From Rebecca billardiae RCC1528 (taxonomy: Eukaryota > Protista > Haptophyta): 64,000 nucleotides of DNA. The position numbers and the translations under genes are program-made. The DNA lies in assembly GCA_965240325.2 (NCBI GenBank), contig OZ251235.1, positions 248,001-312,000 on the forward strand, read 5' to 3'. Positions within the stretch are counted from its first letter, which is position 1, and every line of letters begins with the position of its first letter. The notes under the pieces are model-generated. The model was not told the DNA's origin. It saw only the letters and a program-made list of their open reading frames with translations, and searched no databases. Below, in pieces: positions 11,172-20,891 of the stretch.

Positions 11172-14100
11172 TCAACTGGCGTCCGCTTTGACCGGCTTGC
11201 GAAAAGTCACCTCGTACAGCCGCTCAACCGGCTTGGCCTCCGTGTCTGCGAGGTTGATGATTTCGTTGTACTGCATACGCGCGCGCGCGCACACGGTGCG
11301 GGCGGCTACAGGCGTGAGCAGCGCATGCGCACGCGCGCGCGACGCGGCGCGAGACTCCGGCGCGCACCTTTGCCTTGAGCTTCTTGGTGGCGAAGAGCGC
11401 GAACTCCTTGGCGTCCTCAACCCAGCGCTCGATCAATGGGGCGAGAATGCCATTCGCGTCATCGCGCCAGTCGAAGTATCCCTCTGCGTCGGCGCGGCGG
11501 GTGCGGGCATGCGCGCACGGTCAGCGCACCCCGCCAGCTTAGCTGCGCGCACGACCGCCGAGGCCGTCGCGCGCGCGGGCGAGGGCGCACGCACCTGCGT
11601 AGCTGTAGATGGCTTCCCACAGCTCGGGCATCTCGTCGGCGAGCACGGCGCCGCGACTGCGCTGCAGCGACACCGCCTTCTCGAGCTGCTCCCTGAACGT
11701 CTTGAGCGCTGCCTTCTCCTCCTTCACCCACGCGCGCATCGCGGCCACGTCGCGCAGCATCTGCTCGCGCTGGTCGATGCCCGCGCGCATCACCTTGATG
11801 CGCGCCGCCTCGACGTCCGTGCGGAGCTTGGTCGGGCGCGGGACGTGCGAGCCAGCCCTGCCGCCGCGCGAGCGCAGGATCGCCAGGACCACCTTCCCCT
11901 CGTCCGTCCCGTCGCGCAGCGCGTCGTCGTACGCCGTGTTGCCGAACGCGTCCTCGAGGTTGACGTCGATGCCCTCGACGTCGACGAGGAACTGCAGGCA
12001 GTTCACGTTGCGCGAGGCGGCGGCGAGGTGGATGGGCGCGCGGCCGAACTCGTCCTGCTGGTTCACCGAGCAGGCGAACGTGATGATCCGCTTGAGGTTC
12101 TGCACGTCGCTCTCCGTCGCCGCAGCGTTCACGTGCCGCGCGATGTCGAACTCGCCGAGCTTGGCGCCGTGCTTGACGAGCAGCGCGCACGCCTCGTCCT
12201 GGTGGCCGAGTAGAGCGTCCTGCAGCGGGGTCGCGCCGCGGAGGTCGCGGCTGTTCACATCAGCTCTGTTCTCGATGAGCAGCGCCAAGTTTTCCGTGCG
12301 GCCCTCCGCCGCCGCCACGTGCGTCGCCGAGCGCTTCTCGAGCGTGCCCGCGTTCACGTTGCCGCCGAACGAGCAGAAGCGCTGCAGCACCGCCGTGCCG
12401 CCCGGCACGGCGCCGGCCGCGCACATCTCCTCGGACACGTTGCGCGTGCCGTGGAGGCCGCCGTGGCTCGCGAGCAGCGCGGCGGTCTCGAAGTGGTCGG
12501 ACAGCAGCGCGTCGTCGAGCGCGGTGTGCCCGATCTTGTCCTCGGCGTTCACGTCCGCGCGCGCGGCGAGCAGTAGCTCGATCAGCTTCTTGTGCCCGCC
12601 GCACGCGGCGAGCTGCAGCGGGCGTCGGCCGTGCGAGTCGGCGTGGTCGACGTCCATCGAACGTGCAGAGATCAGCCGGCGAACCTTCTCGAACTCGCCC
12701 TTGACGCACGCCATGCAGACCTTTGCATGCATCTGCTCATCGCGCTTGGCCTTGGCGTTGGCGAGCGTCTGCGTCGCGGCGGCGCGCAAGCGCGCGAGGG
12801 GCGTGGGGCGGGACTCGGCTCAGCTCTGGGCACGCGCGGGGCCCGCAAAGTAGCGACGCCGGCGCACCGCCGGCATCCGGCGCACCTGCTGCAGCGAGAT
12901 GATGTCGCTGGCCCCACCACCACTCGCTTCCGACGCGGAGCGGCCATCCTGCGAGGGGGCGCTCTCGCTGCTCGCATCAATGGAGGTCGAGCCGCCCGAG
13001 CCCGAGCCCGCGCTGTGGCTGCTGTGCTGGCTGTGCGTGCCGGAGGAGGCCGAGGCCTTGGAGCGGCCAGAGCGCGCAGAGCCCATGGCTGCGCAATAGG
13101 GTCACGCGATGGCGCGCGAGGGCGCCGCAGGCGCGTGCAGTCAGCCGTGATGCCAGCCGCGCCGCACGCGTGCGGGCGCAGCGCGCGTACTCAGGCCTTC
13201 GTACTGGCGCACGGCGTTGTCCATGAGCAGATCCTCCTGCGACGGGAACGACTTGAGCAGCTCGCGGTACAGCTCCTGGTTGAGAACAAACGTGGTCGCC
13301 TTGTCGTTGCGGCTGACGCGCGCCGTCTTGAAGTGGCGGATGCCAAAGATGAACGCGACCTCGCCGAGGAACTCGCCCGGCCCGACCGATGCGTTCTTGT
13401 CGTCGCTCTGCTCGGCGTCGTCCCCATCGCTCATGTCCACGCTGCCCGTGGCGAGCAGGATCAGCTCCTTGCACTGGTCACCCGCGCGGAAGATGACCGT
13501 CTCCGCCTCGATCTCGCGCTCGGTGAGCACGGCCGAGAGCCGGTCGATGAAGCCCTCGTCGCAGCCCTTCAGTAGCGTGGTGTCCGCCATGAGCTTCCGG
13601 TTGGTGCACGCTGAGACCTCCATCTGGATCGGCACGGGCAGCCCCGAGTAGATCTGCTCCGAGTCGATGTTGGAGAAGGAGGCGTGCTGCATCTTGTCGA
13701 TAAAGAACTTGGTCATCCGCTCCTTGAGTTCGGCCGGCACGTTCACGTGGCGCACGTACGCGTGCACGAGCTCGAGGTGTGCGCGCTTGCCCACGATCTC
13801 GTCGTCCATCTTCATCACCATGCCCGAGATGCCGCCAACGCAGTACGCGTCTGCGGCGCGCAGGCAGCGCGCGGGCGCCAGGCGTGGGCGCGGGGGCCGT
13901 GCCGTGAGCACTCGCGCGCTCGCGATCGAGGCGGCGGTCCGCTCGCGGCGCGCGAGGCGCGCACAGATTGTCATGTTGATCACGCAGAAGAAGACGAACA
14001 TGGAGAACTCGACGAAGTTGGCCGGGAGCTGCACGACGCCGAGCGCGGAGACGAGCGAGAGGATGAAGAAGACCGCGGTGACGTAGTGATCCATCAGCCG

Positions 14101-17100
14101 CTCCTCCGCCGACATCAAGACGCTGAGCCCGTCGTCGCCGCCCACGGCGATGCGCTGCCTCAGGTAGTAGGTCGCCCACGTGTTGTCCCAGCGGCTCAGC
14201 GCCACCTGCGAGAAGCCGAGCACGTTCCAGATGCCCGCGCCGAAGTGGATGATCAGGATGAGCGGCAGCGCGTTCTTGAGCAGCCCCTTGCCCATCTCGC
14301 GCTCGGTGAGCCCCGCCTTCCACACCTTGAACGCGCCGAGCAGGTAGCGCGCGTTGAGCATGCGCAGGTGGCGCACGCCGAACCGGATCATCGGGTCGAC
14401 GCCGAGCGCCCAAAGCACCTGGTCGTGCGGCCAGCACGCGAACGCGTCGAGCGCAAAGTCGTTCGAGAGGTAGTGCGCGGCCACCTCGGCGGGCGCGAAC
14501 ACCTCGACCGACTTGTCGTTGATGAACGTCGTGTTGAAGCGCAGCAGAATGCGCAGCATGTAGAGCACGTCGCACACGAGGTTGACGTACGGCACCCAGC
14601 GCATCAGCACCACCTCCTCGAAGAAGCACAGCTGCATCGGCACGGTGAGCACGTCCCACAGCACGGTGATGTAAAAGAGCCACACGCTCAGCTTGTTCAT
14701 ACGAGAGTGGACCGAGACGATGTACCACGGCCACACCGTCGTCGTGCTCGCGCCGTTCTCGACGCCCGCCTCGGCAGATACGATCTCGCGCGAGCCAATG
14801 TGGATGTCCAACTTCTCGAGCAGCTGCACGACGCCCTTCTTCTGCGAGCGCTTCGAGCCGGTGAGCGGGTCGACGCCGCCCGCCGCGCGGATCGTCGCGA
14901 CGCGCTCGCGCAGCTTGGCCACCAGCTTCTCCCACGTGATCTTCCGCTGCTCCGCCTCCTCCGCCTCGAGCTCGGCCGCGCTGAGCAGCAGCGAGCGCGT
15001 GACCGCGCCGTTGTGCTCGGTGCCGTCGTCCTCCTCGGCGTGCGTGTCGCCCTCCGTGCCCGCGGCGCCCTCCTCGGCGGCCACCACCGGCTCGCCCTGC
15101 TGCGGGAGGCTGAGCTCGAGCTCCTCCTCCACCCAGCTGCGGACGTGCGCCGCCGTCGTCTCGACAGGGATGGCGACGGCGTGCTTGACCGCGCCCAGCA
15201 GCGTGGCCGCGTCCACCGGCTCCGCCTCGCCCAGCCGGCCGACGTCGATGCGCAGCTGCAGGTTGTCCGCGAGCAGCGCGCACGCGGTCGCGCTGCTGAG
15301 CGCCGTCTTGAGCTCGGCGACGATGGACGCCTCGACCGCGGCGACGCGCACCGCCTCCGCCCTGGCCGCCTTGGCCTTGGCCTGCGCCGCCTTGGACATG
15401 AGCTTGACACCCGCCGTGCCCAGCTCGTCCGCCCTCTGCAGCTTTGGGATGAAGACACCAGACGAGTTGTCCGCGATGCCCATGGCGCTCGCGCCCGCGC
15501 CCGCGTCCTCCGAGGCGGCCAGCAGGATCCACGAGGAGACGCCGATGAAGAACTGCGACTCGGACATGGACTGCGCCGGCCGCGTGCTCCTCCCCTTGGC
15601 GCGCAGCTGCAGCACCTGGTTGCCGCCCGAGTAGATCGCGCGAGCCTGCGCGCCGCTCGGCGGCGCGGAGCCTGACGGCGCCTCTGCTCGCGGCGCCTGC
15701 TGCACCTCGGCGGTGGTGGACTCGACGACCGCGGTAGAGACGGCCTGCTCTGCCGCCTCCTCCACGCTCAATCCGGCCGTCTCCCTCGCCGCATCGGGGC
15801 CCTCCTCCTGCGCCGGCGCCGACGCGTCCGCGCCCGCCGCGGCCAAGTCGGCGAGCGCCTGCGCTGGCGCCACGTTGGGCCGCTTCGGGTCATCATCGGC
15901 AGTGGCGGGAGCGTGGGTAGCGGCGATGGCGGAGACGACGGCGGCGGTCCCGCCGTAGCCGCCGTCAGCAGCGGCAACTGCAGCATCGCCTCCGCTGTCG
16001 GCGGTGCCGTCGTCCGCGTCGGCGGCGACTGCAGCGAGGAGGCGCTCGAGCTCCTCGTCGACGGCGCTGCCCTCGGCGGCCTGGCCGACGACAAGCGTGG
16101 TGCGTCGCGAGCCGGTGCGCCCTGACTCGGCCGTGCGCGAGTTCCGGCGCCGCCCACCCGCCACGACGCCGCCCAGCTCGGCCTCGCCCTGCTCGGGGTC
16201 TACCGTGAGCTCCTCCGGCGGCGCGGTCAGGTTGCGCGACGCCGCCATCAGGTAGCTGAGCAGCGACTTGATCTCCTCCGAGCCGAACTCGCCCAGCTCG
16301 CCCTGCAGCTTGCGCACGTCGCGCATCCGGATCTCGCCGCTGTGCGACGCGTCGAAGACGCGGAAGAGCCGCGTGATGACGAAGCACGCCTCCTCGATGG
16401 CGAGGGTCCCACCCGCCTCGGCCGCGCCGTCCGGAGCGGCGCCCGAGCCGCGCGGAGAGCCTTCGCTGGCTCTCGTCGCCTCGCCCTTGGCCACCGCGCC
16501 GCTGTCGCGCTCGTCGGCGTTGAAGCTCGCGCGAAGCCGGCTGGTGATGCCGCTGAGCCGGCTCTTGCGCTTGGGCGAGCCGGTCTCATCCTCCTCGGCC
16601 GCCTCGGCCGAGTCGCCCTTCTTGTGCGCGCTCCGCGGCGCCGTGCCGGCCAGCTCGGGGGCCTCGAGCGCGGCTGCCGCCTTGGTCAAGAGCGCCTTGT
16701 TCTTCCGCCGCCGCATGGCGTAGCGCTCGTCGAGGATGTCGATGAAGCGGCGCGAGCAGAAGAGCGTCACGTGGCCGAGGTCGGAGAGGTAGAAGGGGCC
16801 GTCGCCGCCGTCCGCATCCCCCAGCATGCCGTACGCCGGCTGCGCGCCCAGCTCTGCGCTCGCCTTCGCCTCGTTGATCTGCTTCGAGAGCTCGATCAGC
16901 ACCGAGCCAGTCTTCGAGCCGCGGCGCAGCGTGTCCTTGAATGAGCCGTCGCCCTTGGGCTTGGCGGCCTCGCTGAGCGAGTTCCGCCGGCCGTACAGCG
17001 AGCTGCTGCCAGGCGCTCGCTGCTGCGCGAGCTGCTCCATCCTGTCCGCGGCCGCCATCTCCGCGCCCGCCGCGCTCCTGGGCGACATCGGCGCCGACGG

Positions 17101-20100
17101 GCCGAGGATCGACTGCAGCTCCGTGTACACGTCGTCGAGCACCTCGCCCACGCGCTCCGAGTCGAGCTCGAACACGTCCTGCAGCATCGCGCGCAGCTGC
17201 GAGTCCTCCTGCGCGCACCGCTCGGCGGCGTTGAGGTGCGCGTAGCGGTGCGCGGGGAGCACGGTGGCGAAGCGGTCGCGGATCTCGATGAGGCCGGCCT
17301 CGGCGGAGGGCAGCTGCAGCACCAGCTTGATGAACTGCTTCGACGCGCCACGCGAGTCGTGCTGGTCGAACGAGCCGTGCTGCTCGGTCAGAGCGCCGCC
17401 CGCTGCCTGCGCGCCGCCGCCGTCGTCGCTGTCATCGTCATCCTGGTGGTCATCGTCGGGGTCAGAGTCGGTGTCCGAGTCGAGCTCCTCGCCGTACTCG
17501 TTGATCCAGAGGTCGGCCCACTTGCCCATCGTGCGGAAGGTGTTGCGCTGCGAGCGATGCAGGTGGCTCAGGTCGGAGGCGAGCTTCATCAGCGACATCT
17601 CGACCTCGCGCGCCTTGTCGACCATCCCGAGCGCATGGTGCTCGTGCAGCTCGGCGAGCTTCGCCACGCTGCGGGTGACCTCGTACAGGTTGAGGCTCCG
17701 AGCCTTGCGCAGCTTGGCCTGGATCCGCGCGTCGTCGGCCCACTGCTCTGGCACGGTCCCGCCCGCCGAGATGAGGATGCTCGCGATCTTGAGGTCGACG
17801 TCGAGCGCGTCCATCAGCGGCGGGCGCGACCACCGGTCAGCGCAGTTCACGTCCGCCATCGCCTTCACGAGCAGGTACACGCTCGAGATCGAGCCGGACA
17901 TGACGGCGAAGTGGAGCGGGGTGCGCCCGTCGTAGTCGGGCAGGTCGACCTTCGCGCCCACCGTGAACAGGAAGCGCAGCCGCTCCACGTCGCCCCGCGT
18001 CGCCGCCTGCCGCACCATGTTGGCGATGTGCTCGCCCTCGGGCCGAGCGGACGCGCGCACGAGCAGCGCCGCGACCATCTCGTGCTGGAGGAGGATGGCG
18101 TCGTCGAGCGCCGAGCGGCCGTGTCGATCGCGCACGTGGACGTCGCACATGTTCGCGATCAGGTACTCGGCAACGCGCACGTTGCCCTCGGTCGCAGCGA
18201 CGTGCAGCGCGGTGCGGCCGTCGTAGTTCTTCGAGTCGAGCGCGATGCCGTGCTCGACCAGCATAGTCATCAGCGGCATGTCGCCCTGCTTGGCCGCCTG
18301 GTGCGTCCACGCGTGCGGCAGGTCGAGCTCGAGCTGCGCACCCGCCTTGACCAGCGCGTCCGCCACCGCCGAGTGCTTGCCCTTCATCGCGTTCTCGAAT
18401 GGCGACGCGCCGAAGCGGTCCTTCGCGGCCGTGTTGGCGCCGAGCTCGCACAGCAGCTTGACGACGGTGGCGTGGCCCTCGACGCACGCGAGGTGGAGTG
18501 GGGTGCGCTTGTCGTGCGAGACGGCCTGGATGTCGAAGCCGCGCGCGATGAGACCCTTGACCGTCTCAACATCGCCCTGCCGCACTGCGATCGCCATCTG
18601 CGAGAACAGCTCCTCGTTGCGGTCGAGGATGGCCGTGCGGATCGTGTTGCGCAGCGCCTCGTACTCGCGCTTCTCGTCCTCGTCCATCTGCTCGGCAAAG
18701 CCGCCGGTCGCGAGGTCGGCGCCCTGCTTGTCGAGGCCGTACTTGCGCAGCACGTTCTGCAGGATGAGGTCGGTCTGCTCGGGGTACTGCGCGATGATTT
18801 GCAGGAACGTCGTCGCGGTGAGCACGCTGAGCGTCACCTCGCCCTTGGAGGACGCGATCGCCGTGTACGGGTGCGGCAGGCCGATGAAGAAGGCGACCTC
18901 GCCCACCACCTGGCCTGGGCCCAGCTCGGAGCGGACGGTGGCGACGAGCGTATCGCCCCGCCAGACGTGCAGCGTGCCGCCCACGCACCAGAGCAGCTCG
19001 GCCGCGCCGTCGCCGCGCTTGAAGACCACCTCGCTCGGCTGTGGGCGGCGGCGGCGGCGGCGGTGGCGCCGGCGGCAACGGGGGGTGGCAGTGCAACGCG
19101 GGTGGCGGGGCCGGCAGGGGCGGCGCCGAGCCGTGAGGAGGCGACCCGCGCCGTGCGCGCGCGCGCGGCGAGAGGTGATCACTGCACGGCGCGTCGCGCG
19201 CGTCACGTCGCGCGCGCACCATCATGTACCGCTCACGCAGGTACATCGTGACGTAGGTGAGGAACTGGTGGTTGCACGACCAGAAGACCCACGTCTGCTC
19301 CATCTGCCGCATGTGCTGCGAGGACGCGACCTCGACGCGCAGCGAGAGCGGCATCTGGCTGTTGATCAGGTCGGAGCCCGCGGCGAGCTTGCGGTGCTGG
19401 AACTGGAAGTGCCCGCGGATGCGCATGGCGAGCTCCTTGGGCAGCTTGCGCTCGGTGACGTAGTCGTCCACCGCCTTCATCAGCTCGTTGTAGTGCACGG
19501 TGCTCTGGTCGGTGCGCACGAGGTACTGGAAGAGCGTGCCGAGCACGTACGCGTAGAAGACCATCTGTACCGCCGCGACGAAGGCGGCGAAGAGCACCTC
19601 GAGCTTCTTGGTGAGGATGATCGTGCCGTACCCCATCGACGTGAGCCCCATCCACGCCATGTACAGGCTGAAGAGGTACTTCTCCGCAAGCGTCGCATCT
19701 GCTGGGTCCAGGTCCGCGTTCTCCGTGAGCAGCGGCACCTGAGCGGGCCACGAGGGCAGCTCAAGCGGCCGATTGGACCAGGGGCCGCCGAGGCCCCACC
19801 AGATGCACGCGATCTGCGCAACGGCGCCGCGCGCGCGCGCCGCCGCGTGTCGGCGTGGCGCGTGAGCCCGCGTGAGCAGACGCGAGCGGGCGAGGGTCAC
19901 TTGCTCCGCGCGCGGTTCGCCGTGCGCGCCGCCGCGACTCGCTGGCTCGTGGGCGCACGCAAGATAAGAGCGCGCGCGCGCCGCGCCGCGCGCGCACCCA
20001 GTGGGGGACGGAGATGATGACGATGGAGAACTTGTAGGTGGCGAGGAACTTAACGTTGACGGTCAGATCGGTGTTGATCTCCTGCACGTACATGATGAGC

Positions 20101-20891
20101 TCGCGTACGCGCAACGAGCGGAGGAGCTGGACGATCGCCCACAGCCAGTCGGTGCCGGTCAGGATGAACACGGCGCGCGCGATGTGCAGCGCGAGGCTCG
20201 TGCCGATGTCGCGCGCGGCGTCCTTGGCGGTGTAGAGGCTGTGCCCGCTCGAGTCGTCATCGATGCTGCTGCTCGCCGCCTCAAGCAGCTTCTGCTTCTC
20301 CTCACCCGTCGGCTGCTCCATGATCGTCTTGCAGATCCAGCACAGCTCGAAGAGGTCGCCCAGCACGTCGATCACGATCGCGACGCCGCTGTGCGCGAGC
20401 TCGTACGGGAAGGCGAGGCGGAGCGGGATCATGAGCTCCTCGATCGTAAAGATAGGCACGCGCGCCAACCTCGCGATCGCCTTGAAACGGTCGCGCCTCT
20501 CGCGCTCCTCCGTTGCGATTTGCTGGCGCGCGCGCTCGGCGTCGAGCGTCGCCTCCTCGCCCGCCAGCACCGGGCGCCACGTCACGCGGTGGTCGACGGG
20601 CTTCCGCCGGCCATGGTCGTGACTGGGCTTGAGGATGCCCTTGATGACCTTGGCTTCCTTCGTCCGGCCCTTCTTGAGATCACCCGCCTCCTCCTCCTCC
20701 GAGTCCTCCTCAGTGCGCCCGAGGGCGCGGTCAAAGAGCTTGCGAGCGCGCGCGCCGGCGCCCAGCGCCGCGGCCGCGAAGCGGCCGCGGGCCGCGTCGC
20801 GTGGGGAGGCGTCGTTGCCGCCAGCGCTCGTCACCGATGTCTCGTCGGCGTCCGCTGCGGTCTCGTCGTTCAGGGGCGTCACCTTGCCCAT
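11172..20891 (-). CDS. Tandem two-module cation channel, ~2937 aa: [6TM-pore, CNBD, ankyrin]-linker with EF-hand-like motif-[6TM-pore, CNBD, ankyrin]. Exons 20891-19998, 19813-19220, 19038-13965, 13850-13191, 13088-12886, 12768-11595, 11483-11368, 11270-11172
   Basis: Seven GT-AG introns give a continuous 8814-nt frame. Module 1: S4 LLRSLRVRE, S5 PHW|IACIWW, pore LTSMGYGTI, CNBD VVGEVAFF, ankyrins (DYDGRTPLH). Module 2: S2-S3 FNTTF...HYL...FALD, S4 RHLRMLNAR, pore VSALGVVQLP, CNBD FLGEVAFIFG, ankyrins (DLRGATPLQDA). Confidence 0.88.

What the first reader, a model, noticed from the sequence alone, without database searches (positions are those of the whole stretch)
14020..19650. Asymmetric selectivity filter: module 1 has TSMGYG, module 2 has SALGVVQ
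Seen: the module 1 pore loop (~19620-19650) is WMGLTSMGYGTII, while the equivalent module 2 loop (~14020-14065) is ILSLVSALGVVQLPAN with no GYG. Known: TxGYG confers K+ selectivity, and CNG channels lacking YG are non-selective and Ca2+-permeable. Inference: a pore built from two GYG and two non-GYG loops could have unusual selectivity, or module 2 may act as a built-in regulatory subunit.
Basis: partly seen in the sequence, partly recalled or inferred. Interest (0 to 1): 0.75.

Follow-up and report, generated by a model that had tools for sequence, protein, structure and literature searches.

The report
Two-module algal channel with mismatched pore loops
One 2,937-residue algal protein carries two different plant-Shaker-like channel units, only the first with a potassium-type pore loop, and relatives in other algae keep this mismatch, so it is a real design whose ion preference has never been measured.

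Summary
On the minus strand, module 1 reads TSMGYG (19643-19626) and module 2 reads SALGVVQ (14049-14029) at the aligned pore-loop position.

Both lie in one 8-exon gene (20891-11172, 2,937 aa). Its layout is 6TM-pore-C-linker-CNBD-ankyrin, a roughly 1,000-aa linker, then the same unit again. It is colinear end to end with a 2,704-aa public sequence (P0001).

The mismatch is a family trait:
- None of 20 strong module-2 relatives has G[YF]G.
- Their loop is T-x-L-G-x-x-Q-h-P-x-N-x-x-E, one residue shorter than a K+ loop, with Pro and Glu invariant in 21/21.
- Module 1 keeps Gly-Tyr in 12 of 13 sequences. Its last Gly varies; the closest orthologue, from Diacronema lutheri, has GYA.
- Module-1 and module-2 sequences form separate, mirrored clades.
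- The module-2 model is a confident, intact 6TM fold resembling hERG, GORK and HCN.

Function is inferred, not shown. Most likely two chains build one two-fold-symmetric pore that cannot form four K+ sites and is poorly K+-selective. Two separate pores, or a silent module 2, remain possible.

I found no paper on this lineage. The scan's own unchecked notes report the same mismatch in paralogues elsewhere in this genome.

The parts
11172..20891 (-). Whole gene, 8 exons, 2,937 aa. Exons: 20891-19998, 19813-19220, 19038-13965, 13850-13191, 13088-12886, 12768-11595, 11483-11368, 11270-11172 (stop TGA 11174-11172).
   Evidence: Read from the sequence with GTGCGC...CAG introns. Every junction is bridged by colinear alignment to P0001 and other homologues.
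19998..20460 (-). Module 1 S1-S5 region. The voltage-sensor-like part is atypical: S1 is polar and S4 has few charges.
   Evidence: Aligns with the N-termini of P0001, P0013, P0033 and P0056 (A1). Pfam Ion_trans does not detect it.
19626..19643 (-). Module 1 selectivity-filter motif TSMGYG.
   Evidence: Family comparison.
19220..19813 (-). Exon 2: end of module 1 S5, pore helix, filter, S6 and C-linker.
   Evidence: Best PDB sequence matches are SKOR and GORK at 5e-14. E = 2e-78 to P0001 residues 278-476.
18784..19041 (-). CNBD 1 (Pfam cNMP_binding). Its phosphate-binding cassette reads ...GLPHPYTA, with Tyr where the phosphate-binding Arg normally sits.
17764..18591 (-). Ankyrin repeat block 1.
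   Evidence: Pfam Ank families, E = 1e-37. 42% identity to P0001 across this region.
14704..17763 (-). Inter-module linker of about 1,000 aa. It is conserved coding sequence, with a weak EF-hand-like loop at 16255-16377.
   Evidence: BLASTP against P0001 is colinear over exon-3 residues 1-773 and 1149-1690. The EF-hand match is E = 0.09, below threshold.
13966..14703 (-). Module 2 S1 to mid-S6.
   Evidence: Pfam Ion_trans. AF2 pLDDT 86.3, pTM 0.80. Foldseek matches hERG, GORK, HCN1, CNG and AKT1 at TM 0.61-0.70.
14047..14109 (-). Module 2 pore helix.
   Evidence: Helix at residues 231-251 of the model.
14029..14049 (-). Module 2 non-GYG filter-position motif SALGVVQ. The full loop ALGVVQLPAN is at 14046-14017.
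   Evidence: Conservation counts.
13851..13964 (-). In-frame intron inside module 2 S6. It splits a Tyr codon, giving ...NMTI-Y-AYCVGG.
   Evidence: Sequence. Homologues read NMT[IV]YAW.VG.ISxxVMKQDDE without this insert.
13192..13848 (-). Module 2 end of S6, C-linker and CNBD 2. Its cassette reads ...GIRHFKTA, with Lys at the Arg position.
   Evidence: SthK at 7e-11, with the alignment shown. 55% identity to P0001.
11596..12768 (-). Ankyrin repeat block 2 and the C-terminal helical region.
   Evidence: Pfam Ank. 47% identity to the P0001 C-terminus, E = 3e-121.

Best explanation
Shown: a single 2,937-aa polypeptide carries two old, very divergent plant-Shaker/CNBD-type channel units, each 6TM-pore-C-linker-CNBD-like domain-ankyrin repeats, joined by a conserved linker of about 1,000 aa. 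Module 1 has a K+-type loop (TSMGYG). Module 2 has a conserved non-K+ loop (SALGVVQLPAN; family pattern T-x-L-G-x-x-Q-h-P-x-N-x-x-E). That loop is one residue shorter, lacks Tyr-Gly, and in this gene also lacks the Thr/Ser that would form site S4. The mismatch is kept across a family seen in Diacronema lutheri and in MMETSP and metatranscriptome sequences.

Inferred: two chains assemble so that modules alternate around one pore, as in TPC and K2P channels and in 2:2 AKT1-AtKC1 heteromers. Only two of the four strands could supply the upper carbonyl cages (S1/S2) and the S4 hydroxyls. The filter therefore cannot form four contiguous four-fold K+ sites. It should behave as a two-fold-symmetric, weakly selective cation pore of the NaK/HCN/CNG type rather than a strict K+ channel. 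Gating is probably by voltage and/or the cytosolic C-linker/CNBD-like/ankyrin ring rather than classical cyclic-nucleotide binding, because both CNBDs lack the phosphate-binding Arg.
For: One gene: a 2,021-codon open frame spans CNBD1 to CNBD2. Alignment to P0001 is colinear from N-terminus to C-terminus, including the linker. P0013, with both modules, is an MMETSP transcript, and two-module D. lutheri proteins exist: P0010, P0056 and P0155 named, modules located.

Conserved mismatch: 0 of 21 module-2 loops have G[YF]G, with P259 and E264 invariant, G254 17/21 and T/S251 18/21. Module 1 keeps Gly-Tyr in 12 of 13.

Module orthology: module-1 and module-2 sequences form separate clades with mirrored branching (100/97 and 95/85).

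Module 2 is intact: AF2 pLDDT 86.3, and it resembles the hERG/GORK/HCN/CNG folds. S6 and the start of the C-linker are highly conserved.

Selectivity rule: K+-selective permeation needs four contiguous sites; NaK has 2 and CNG 3; a Thr-to-Ala change at S4 abolishes selectivity; weaver G156S heteromers pass Na+ (review PMC12658365).

CNBDs: Tyr (CNBD1) and Lys (CNBD2) replace the Arg; P0001 has Thr-Asn there.
Against: There is no functional, expression or oligomer data. No RNA run was listed for this genome. Nothing here shows that modules 1 and 2 share a pore, and a linker of more than 1,000 aa does not force that. Trk/Ktr/HKT-type pores (my own knowledge) remain K+-permeable with a single conserved Gly per loop, so the loss of selectivity is an expectation and not a certainty. 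The two residues at the Tyr-Gly positions of module 2 vary freely, which also fits a loop that no longer lines a filter. The tree's outgroup sampling was limited to hits of one query.
Confidence: 0.55

Rival explanations
1. Twin-pore assembly. Four chains come together; the four module-1 units form a K+-type pore and the four module-2 units form a second, CNG-like non-selective pore. The fusion then serves only to keep the two conductances together in fixed 1:1 amounts.
For: The modules are separated by more than 1,000 residues plus CNBD and ankyrin domains. Same-genome notes describe paralogues with far longer linkers (unchecked). Each module has its own complete C-linker/CNBD/ankyrin set, as a self-sufficient subunit would. 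The modules are too diverged for pairwise BLAST.
Against: All characterised two-repeat channels (TPC, K2P, TOK) use both repeats in one pore (my own knowledge; Pozdnyakov 2020 discussion). Module 1's last filter Gly is relaxed in orthologues (GYA, GYS, GYI), which would be odd for a homotetrameric K+ pore. Long-term fusion with mirrored trees fits obligate partners better.
Confidence: 0.2
2. Module 2 is a built-in silent or regulatory subunit. It shares the pore with module 1, but the channel stays essentially K+-selective. The function of module 2 is then to tune gating, trafficking or conductance, as AtKC1 does for AKT1 or KvS subunits do for Kv2.
For: 2:2 AKT1-KAT3(AtKC1) heteromers are among the related PDB matches (7xuf, 7wm1). 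The T-x-L-G half of the loop is conserved and could keep the lower sites. Single-Gly loops support K+ transport in Trk/HKT (my own knowledge).
Against: Known silent subunits keep GYG. Module 2 here lacks Tyr-Gly, is one residue shorter and has Ala at the S4 Thr position. The four-site rule predicts that selectivity is lost.
Confidence: 0.18
3. Artefact: two neighbouring genes, or a decaying second copy, read through only because stop codons are rare in DNA of about 70% G+C.
For: Other frames of this GC-rich region also show open frames of 600-680 codons. No RNA data could be obtained.
Against: The linker is conserved with P0001 at 33-42% identity and is colinear. Transcript-derived homologues (P0013, P0152) carry both modules in one ORF. 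Module 2 matches relatives at E = 5e-56 and folds confidently. The only AT-richer flanks lie outside 11172-20891.
Confidence: 0.02

Closest known systems
[quoted passage not shown] 2020, PMC7576140)
   Same: Two 6TM-CNBD repeats sit in one chain. First and second repeats form separate, mirrored clades, which implies co-evolving, specialised halves.
   Different: Those are reported with TVGYG-like filters in both repeats, and the paper does not mention ankyrin repeats at all. In my tree, tandem channels with GYG/GFG in both repeats fall in other clades. That survey found no tandem channels in haptophytes.
Plant Shaker channels SKOR, GORK and AKT1, and the 2:2 AKT1-AtKC1 heteromer
   Same: Each module has the non-swapped 6TM, C-linker, CNBD-like domain and ankyrin layout. 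These are the best PDB sequence matches for module 1. By my reading of the sequences against remembered KAT1/AKT1 motifs, not by a tool alignment, the phosphate-binding cassette has the plant length, and it has no Arg. The 2:2 heteromer is the non-covalent analogue of this design.
   Different: Plant subunits are separate genes, and all of them, including AtKC1, keep GYG. No KHA domain was detected here.
Two-pore channels (TPC1-3) and K2P channels
   Same: Two pore-forming repeats per chain, a dimer forming one pore, and a two-fold-symmetric filter built from two different loops. TPC1 has EF-hands in the inter-repeat linker; there is a weak EF-hand-like loop here.
   Different: There is no sequence or fold match to TPC or K2P in any search. 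K2P loops both keep G-x-G. TPCs are domain-swapped and lack CNBD and ankyrin domains.
Metazoan CNG channels (filter TIGET, no YG) and CNGA/CNGB heteromers
   Same: A pore loop of the CNBD-channel family that has lost Tyr-Gly and gives a non-selective cation pore. The subunits of one pore carry different loops.
   Different: CNG loops are two residues shorter and carry the Ca2+-binding Glu. Module 2 is one residue shorter, has no acidic residue, and has a conserved Gln-h-Pro instead.
Sperm CNGK (tetraKCNG), four repeats in one chain
   Same: A concatenated CNBD-channel repeat architecture, with repeats that have specialised.
   Different: It has four repeats rather than two, is K+-selective and lacks ankyrin blocks.

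Membership tests
Two-repeat tandem CNBD channels (Pozdnyakov 2020) | Two 6TM + C-linker + CNBD repeats in one polypeptide | tested here: met
   Pfam finds Ion_trans, two cNMP_binding domains and Ank. Colinearity with the 2,704-aa P0001 holds throughout.
Two-repeat tandem CNBD channels (Pozdnyakov 2020) | First and second repeats form separate clades with parallel branching | tested here: met
   Module-1 clade 100/97, module-2 clade 95/85, same branching order.
Two-repeat tandem CNBD channels (Pozdnyakov 2020) | TVGYG or a close variant in both repeats | tested here: not met
   Module 2 reads SALGVV. 0 of 21 family module-2 loops have G[YF]G.
Two-repeat tandem CNBD channels (Pozdnyakov 2020) | Falls inside the described dinoflagellate or oomycete tandem clades | tested here: inconclusive
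   It lies in a clade separate from the other tandem channels, but I could not tie those sequences to the published ones.
Plant Shaker (AKT1/SKOR/GORK) family | Non-swapped 6TM, C-linker, CNBD-like domain, ankyrin repeats | tested here: met
   Holds for each module.
Plant Shaker (AKT1/SKOR/GORK) family | TxGYG filter in every pore-forming subunit | tested here: not met
   Module 1 has TSMGYG; module 2 has SALGVV.
Plant Shaker (AKT1/SKOR/GORK) family | Single-module subunit with a C-terminal KHA domain | tested here: not met
   The chain is tandem. No KHA hit appeared in Pfam scans of the pieces. The last two small exons were not scanned.
Canonical K+-selective channel | Four TxGYG strands giving four contiguous K+ sites | tested here: not met
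   At most two such strands per pseudo-tetramer. The module-2 loop is one residue shorter and has Ala at the S4 Thr position.
Canonical K+-selective channel | Measured K+ over Na+ selectivity | not testable with these tools
   Needs electrophysiology.
TPC / K2P pseudo-tetramers | Sequence or fold homology to TPC or K2P | tested here: not met
   All top PDB sequence and fold matches are KCNH, HCN, CNG or plant Shaker.
TPC / K2P pseudo-tetramers | Dimer of two-repeat chains around one pore | not testable with these tools
   No multimer modelling or experimental data were available.
Cyclic-nucleotide-gated channel (functional sense) | Phosphate-binding cassette with the conserved Arg-Thr/Ser-Ala | tested here: not met
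   CNBD1 has Tyr-Thr-Ala. CNBD2 has Lys-Thr-Ala, aligned to the SthK Arg. P0001 CNBD2 has Thr-Asn.

The most novel reading that the evidence does not exclude
This algal family is an obligate covalent 2:2 pseudo-heterotetramer. Two Gly-Tyr strands alternate with two shorter T-x-L-G-x-x-Q-h-P strands. That would make a two-fold-symmetric, non-K+-selective (Na+- and/or Ca2+-permeable, depolarising) pore: a TPC-like cation channel built independently from Shaker/CNBD-ankyrin parts. Its long inter-module linker would serve as an insertion site for sensor domains. LOV/RGS arrays precede an M2-type module in the public relative P0005, and unchecked scan notes describe such arrays between the two channel halves in paralogues.
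Probability: 0.35. Interest if true: 0.8.

Novelty: new variant of a known kind. Interest (0 to 1): 0.6.

Why it matters
Ion selectivity in the tetrameric cation-channel superfamily is usually studied with symmetric filters or engineered concatemers. Here nature has fixed a 1:1 covalent pairing of a K+-type loop and a non-K+-type loop in a Shaker/CNBD scaffold. It has kept that pairing across a family seen in Diacronema and marine transcript data, with deeper relatives in Rhodelphis, a cryptophyte and a dinoflagellate. If the two modules share a pore, this is a natural test of how many GYG strands a filter needs. It would also be a third independent route, after K2P and TPC, to a two-fold-symmetric pore. 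The family is uncharacterised: public names are 'hypothetical protein' or 'ankyrin repeat protein'. It may underlie membrane excitability or sensory signalling in haptophytes, which are ecologically major algae. Relatives with LOV/RGS arrays next to the same module-2 type make the scaffold interesting for natural light-regulated channels.

Tried and rejected
- The word-index search over the module-2 region of exon 3 found nothing at E <= 1e-5. This was a sensitivity limit, not absence: the exhaustive search then found the family.
- No RNA run was listed for this stretch, so read laying was not used and expression and splicing in this organism remain unverified.
- A Pfam scan of the linker failed once because of a frame slip. 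Repeated in frame, it gave only sub-threshold EF-hand hits.
- I searched the supplement of PMC7576140 for the published tandem filters. It returned only alignment starts, so I rely on the paper's own text.
- Direct BLASTP of module 1 against module 2 gave no significant alignment. Loop equivalence therefore rests on alignments to hERG and SKOR and on the model.
- I considered folding a two-module piece of the D. lutheri protein P0010 to see whether the two pore domains pack together. I rejected this because the tool returns no inter-domain confidence, the alignment would be shallow, and the N-terminus of P0010 looks mis-modelled. Any packing would reflect the predictor's priors.
- I rejected dN/dS because the available relatives are too diverged (40-60% identity).
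- I rejected the reading that a new gene starts at ATG 13086 (MGSARS...). P0001 runs straight through the equivalent region (...HEGLMTSRSGKSKSS...).


Full report
**What is in the sequence.** The region is about 70% G+C and carries one long minus-strand gene. WMGLTSMGYGTII is at 19655-19617, with TSMGYG at 19643-19626. ILSLVSALGVVQLPAN is at 14064-14017, with SALGVVQ at 14049-14029.

**Domains.** Pfam finds Ion_trans, two cNMP_binding domains and many ankyrin repeats in the 2,021-codon open frame 19206-13141. It finds a weak Ion_trans_2 over the module-1 pore and a second ankyrin block at 12789-11539.

**Gene model.** Reading the DNA with its recurrent GTGCGC...CAG introns gives eight exons:
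- 20891-19998
- 19813-19220
- 19038-13965
- 13850-13191
- 13088-12886
- 12768-11595
- 11483-11368
- 11270-11172

Together they encode 2,937 aa. Homologues bridge every junction:
- SVPHW|IACIWW matches P0001 SVPHWVACVWW.
- NMTI-Y-AYCVGGISGMVMK matches NM[ST].YAW.VGGISGVVMKQDDE.
- ...YEGL|T-MGSARSGRSKAS matches P0001 ...HEGLMTSRSGKSKSS.
- The ankyrin-2 and C-terminal region is 47% identical and colinear.

**One protein, not two genes.** Exon 3 alone runs from CNBD1 through ankyrin block 1 and the linker into module 2. BLASTP of exon 3 against P0001 is colinear over residues 1-773 (42% identity) and 1149-1690 (33%). P0001 is 2,704 aa on an 8,395-nt contig almost filled by its ORF. The linker is therefore conserved coding sequence.

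Other two-module relatives are:
- P0013, 2,647 aa, an MMETSP transcript
- P0033, 2,730 aa
- P0056, P0155 and P0156 from Diacronema lutheri
- P0158
- P0127/P0152, MMETSP
- P0076 from Rhodelphis marinus

Their modules were located; P0152 is a 90%-identity cluster mate of P0127. No RNA run was listed for this genome, so the evidence for a single transcript comes from these relatives.

**Are the two loops equivalent?** Direct BLASTP of module 1 against module 2 is not significant (E = 0.29); the two units are very old paralogues. Equivalence comes from three sources:
- HMMER aligns module 2 to hERG without a gap. SLVSALGVVQLPAN pairs with SLTSVGFGNVSPN, so G-V-V occupies the G-F-G positions.
- HMMER aligns module 1 to SKOR and GORK, with LTSMGYGTI pairing with MATVGYGDI.
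- The AF2 model of the module-2 transmembrane piece has S1-S6, a pore helix at 231-251, a 10-residue loop at 252-261 and S6 from 262. It used 21 sequences and scored pLDDT 86.3 and pTM 0.80.

Foldseek places that model with hERG, GORK, HCN1, CNG, EAG, AKT1 and SKOR at TM 0.61-0.70. Module 2 is thus an intact, non-swapped CNBD-family channel module.

**Conservation of the mismatch.** The exhaustive search with the module-2 transmembrane piece gave 36 representatives at E <= 1e-10, the best at 5e-56 and 40-42% identity.

In a 21-sequence alignment of module-2 units (A2), the loop reads T/S251 (18/21), x, L253, G254 (17/21), two variable positions, Q257 (12/21), L/V258, P259 (21/21), x, N261 (15/21), x, x, E264 (21/21). 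No sequence has G[YF]G. The loop is one residue shorter than module 1's.

In the same search, 0 of 20 strong hits covering the filter carry G[YF]G, against 29 of 40 weaker hits. Most of the 11 exceptions are deeper members of the same family.

Module 1 keeps Gly-Tyr in 12 of 13 sequences:

| Sequence | Module 1 filter |
|---|---|
| window, P0001 | TSMGYG |
| P0013 | TALGYG |
| P0033 | ATVGYG |
| P0056 | TRIGYG |
| P0161 | TAFGYG |
| P0155 (closest orthologue, 60% identical in CNBD1-ankyrin) | TSMGYA |
| P0158 | TSNGYA |
| P0010 | CGLGYS |
| P0127, P0221 | SSIGYI |
| P0156 | AGLGY-E |
| P0076 (Rhodelphis) | ANLGNL |

So the conserved contrast is an aromatic Gly-Tyr loop against a shorter loop with no aromatic residue. 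The last Gly of module 1 is itself relaxed.

**Tree.** An ML tree of the S5-to-C-linker segments puts the family in one clade (100/99). That clade splits into a module-1 clade (100/97) and a module-2 clade (95/85) with the same internal order. Tandem channels with GYG/GFG in both repeats (P0038, P0042-44, P0074, P0079, P0082) lie elsewhere.

The deep members P0076 (SGVGYS) and P0127 (SATGVIG) suggest that Tyr-Gly was lost in module 2 at the base of the crown group that includes D. lutheri P0056.

**Mechanism (inferred).** Each module begins and ends in the cytosol, so both loops face the same side. The most economical reading is a dimer with modules alternating around one pore, as in TPC, K2P and 2:2 AKT1-AtKC1 channels.

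In such a pore, only the two module-1 strands could give the S1/S2 carbonyls and the S4 hydroxyl. Module 2 of this gene has Ala at the position of the S4 Thr.

The review PMC12658365 summarises the relevant rule:
- K+-selective permeation needs four contiguous sites.
- NaK (two sites) and CNG (three sites) are non-selective.
- Thr-to-Ala at S4 abolishes selectivity.
- Weaver G156S subunits pass Na+ even in heteromers.

I therefore expect a weakly selective cation pore, at about 55% confidence for the whole chain of inference.

The rivals are two separate homotetrameric pores (about 20%), a silent or regulatory module 2 in a pore that stays K+-selective (about 18%), and an annotation artefact (about 2%).

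Both CNBDs lack the phosphate-binding Arg. CNBD1 has Tyr. CNBD2 has Lys, aligned to the SthK Arg with a two-residue insertion. P0001 has Thr-Asn. Classical cyclic-nucleotide gating is therefore doubtful, as it is in plant Shakers and KCNH channels.

**Comparison with what is known.** Pozdnyakov et al. 2020 (PMC7576140) first reported two-repeat tandem CNBD channels, in dinoflagellates and oomycetes. They state that the filters of these channels are TVGYG-like and that clade-wide deviations occur only in metazoan CNG channels. They found no tandem channels in the other SAR groups they checked; haptophytes appear in the paper only through a single-module HCN-like channel, and ankyrin repeats are not mentioned.

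Full-text searches found no paper on an ankyrin-bearing tandem lineage with mismatched filters. Public names for the relatives are 'hypothetical protein', 'Cyclic nucleotide-binding domain-containing protein' or 'ankyrin repeat protein'. I rate this a new variant of a known kind.

**Earlier scan notes.** These are unchecked AI notes. They report the same gene as a 2,937-aa tandem channel, which agrees with my independent model. They also report several paralogues elsewhere in this genome with the same mismatch. One follow-up (s1-338787) reached a similar conclusion on a 3,064-aa paralogue. So the scan has found this before on other DNA.

Notes on paralogues with LOV/RGS arrays between the two halves fit a public relative that I scanned myself. 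P0005 has four PAS_9 (LOV-type) domains and an RGS domain upstream of a module-2-type unit.

**Limits.**
- There are no expression data for this organism and no oligomer or permeation data.
- The organism is inferred only as a haptophyte-type alga, from its closest relatives.
- The tree's outgroups came from one query.
- The joined spliced protein was not searched or folded.

Noticed in passing
window 16255-16377 (-): There is an EF-hand-like loop (FRVFDASHSGEIRMRDVRKL) in the inter-module linker. Pfam EF-hand_7 and EF-hand_6 match only at E = 0.09-0.18, below threshold. Relatives P0161, P0213 and P0054 have clear EF-hand domains. This recalls the EF-hands in the TPC1 inter-repeat linker.
   Followed up: partly
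window 18859-18885 (-) and 13321-13341 (-): Both CNBD phosphate-binding cassettes lack the canonical Arg, reading PHPYTA in CNBD1 and RHFKTA in CNBD2. By my own reading against remembered KAT1/AKT1 motifs, not a tool alignment, both have the plant-Shaker cassette length. They are probably CNBD-homology domains rather than cyclic-nucleotide sensors.
   Followed up: partly
window 19998-20460 (-): The S1-S4 region of module 1 is atypical: S1 is polar (RLARVPIFTIEELMIPLRLAF) and S4 has only three Arg. Pfam Ion_trans does not detect it. It is nevertheless conserved among family members.
   Followed up: partly
P0005 (public relative, 2,567 aa): Four PAS_9 (LOV-type) domains and an RGS domain lie upstream of a module-2-type channel unit with CNBD and ankyrin repeats. 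This is independent public support for the LOV/RGS-channel fusions that the scan's notes describe in paralogues of this genome.
   Followed up: partly
window 11172-20891, introns: All seven introns are short (about 95-185 nt) and GC-rich. Six of the seven donors read GTGCG (five are GTGCGC); the seventh reads GTACGC. All acceptors read CAG, and several introns show CTCAC/CTGAC branch-like motifs. One intron (13964-13851) is in frame and open, so a naive ORF reading inserts 38 false residues into module-2 S6.
   Followed up: yes
window 11188-20017, other frames and the plus strand: Many open frames of 300-680 codons overlap the gene in other frames and on the opposite strand. They are the expected by-product of about 70% G+C and show no sign of being genes.
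   Followed up: no
window 17400-17470 (-), approximate: There is an acidic low-complexity run (DSDTDSDPDDDHQDDDDSDD) just after a conserved helical block of the linker. P0001 has a similar acidic stretch at the same place.
   Followed up: no
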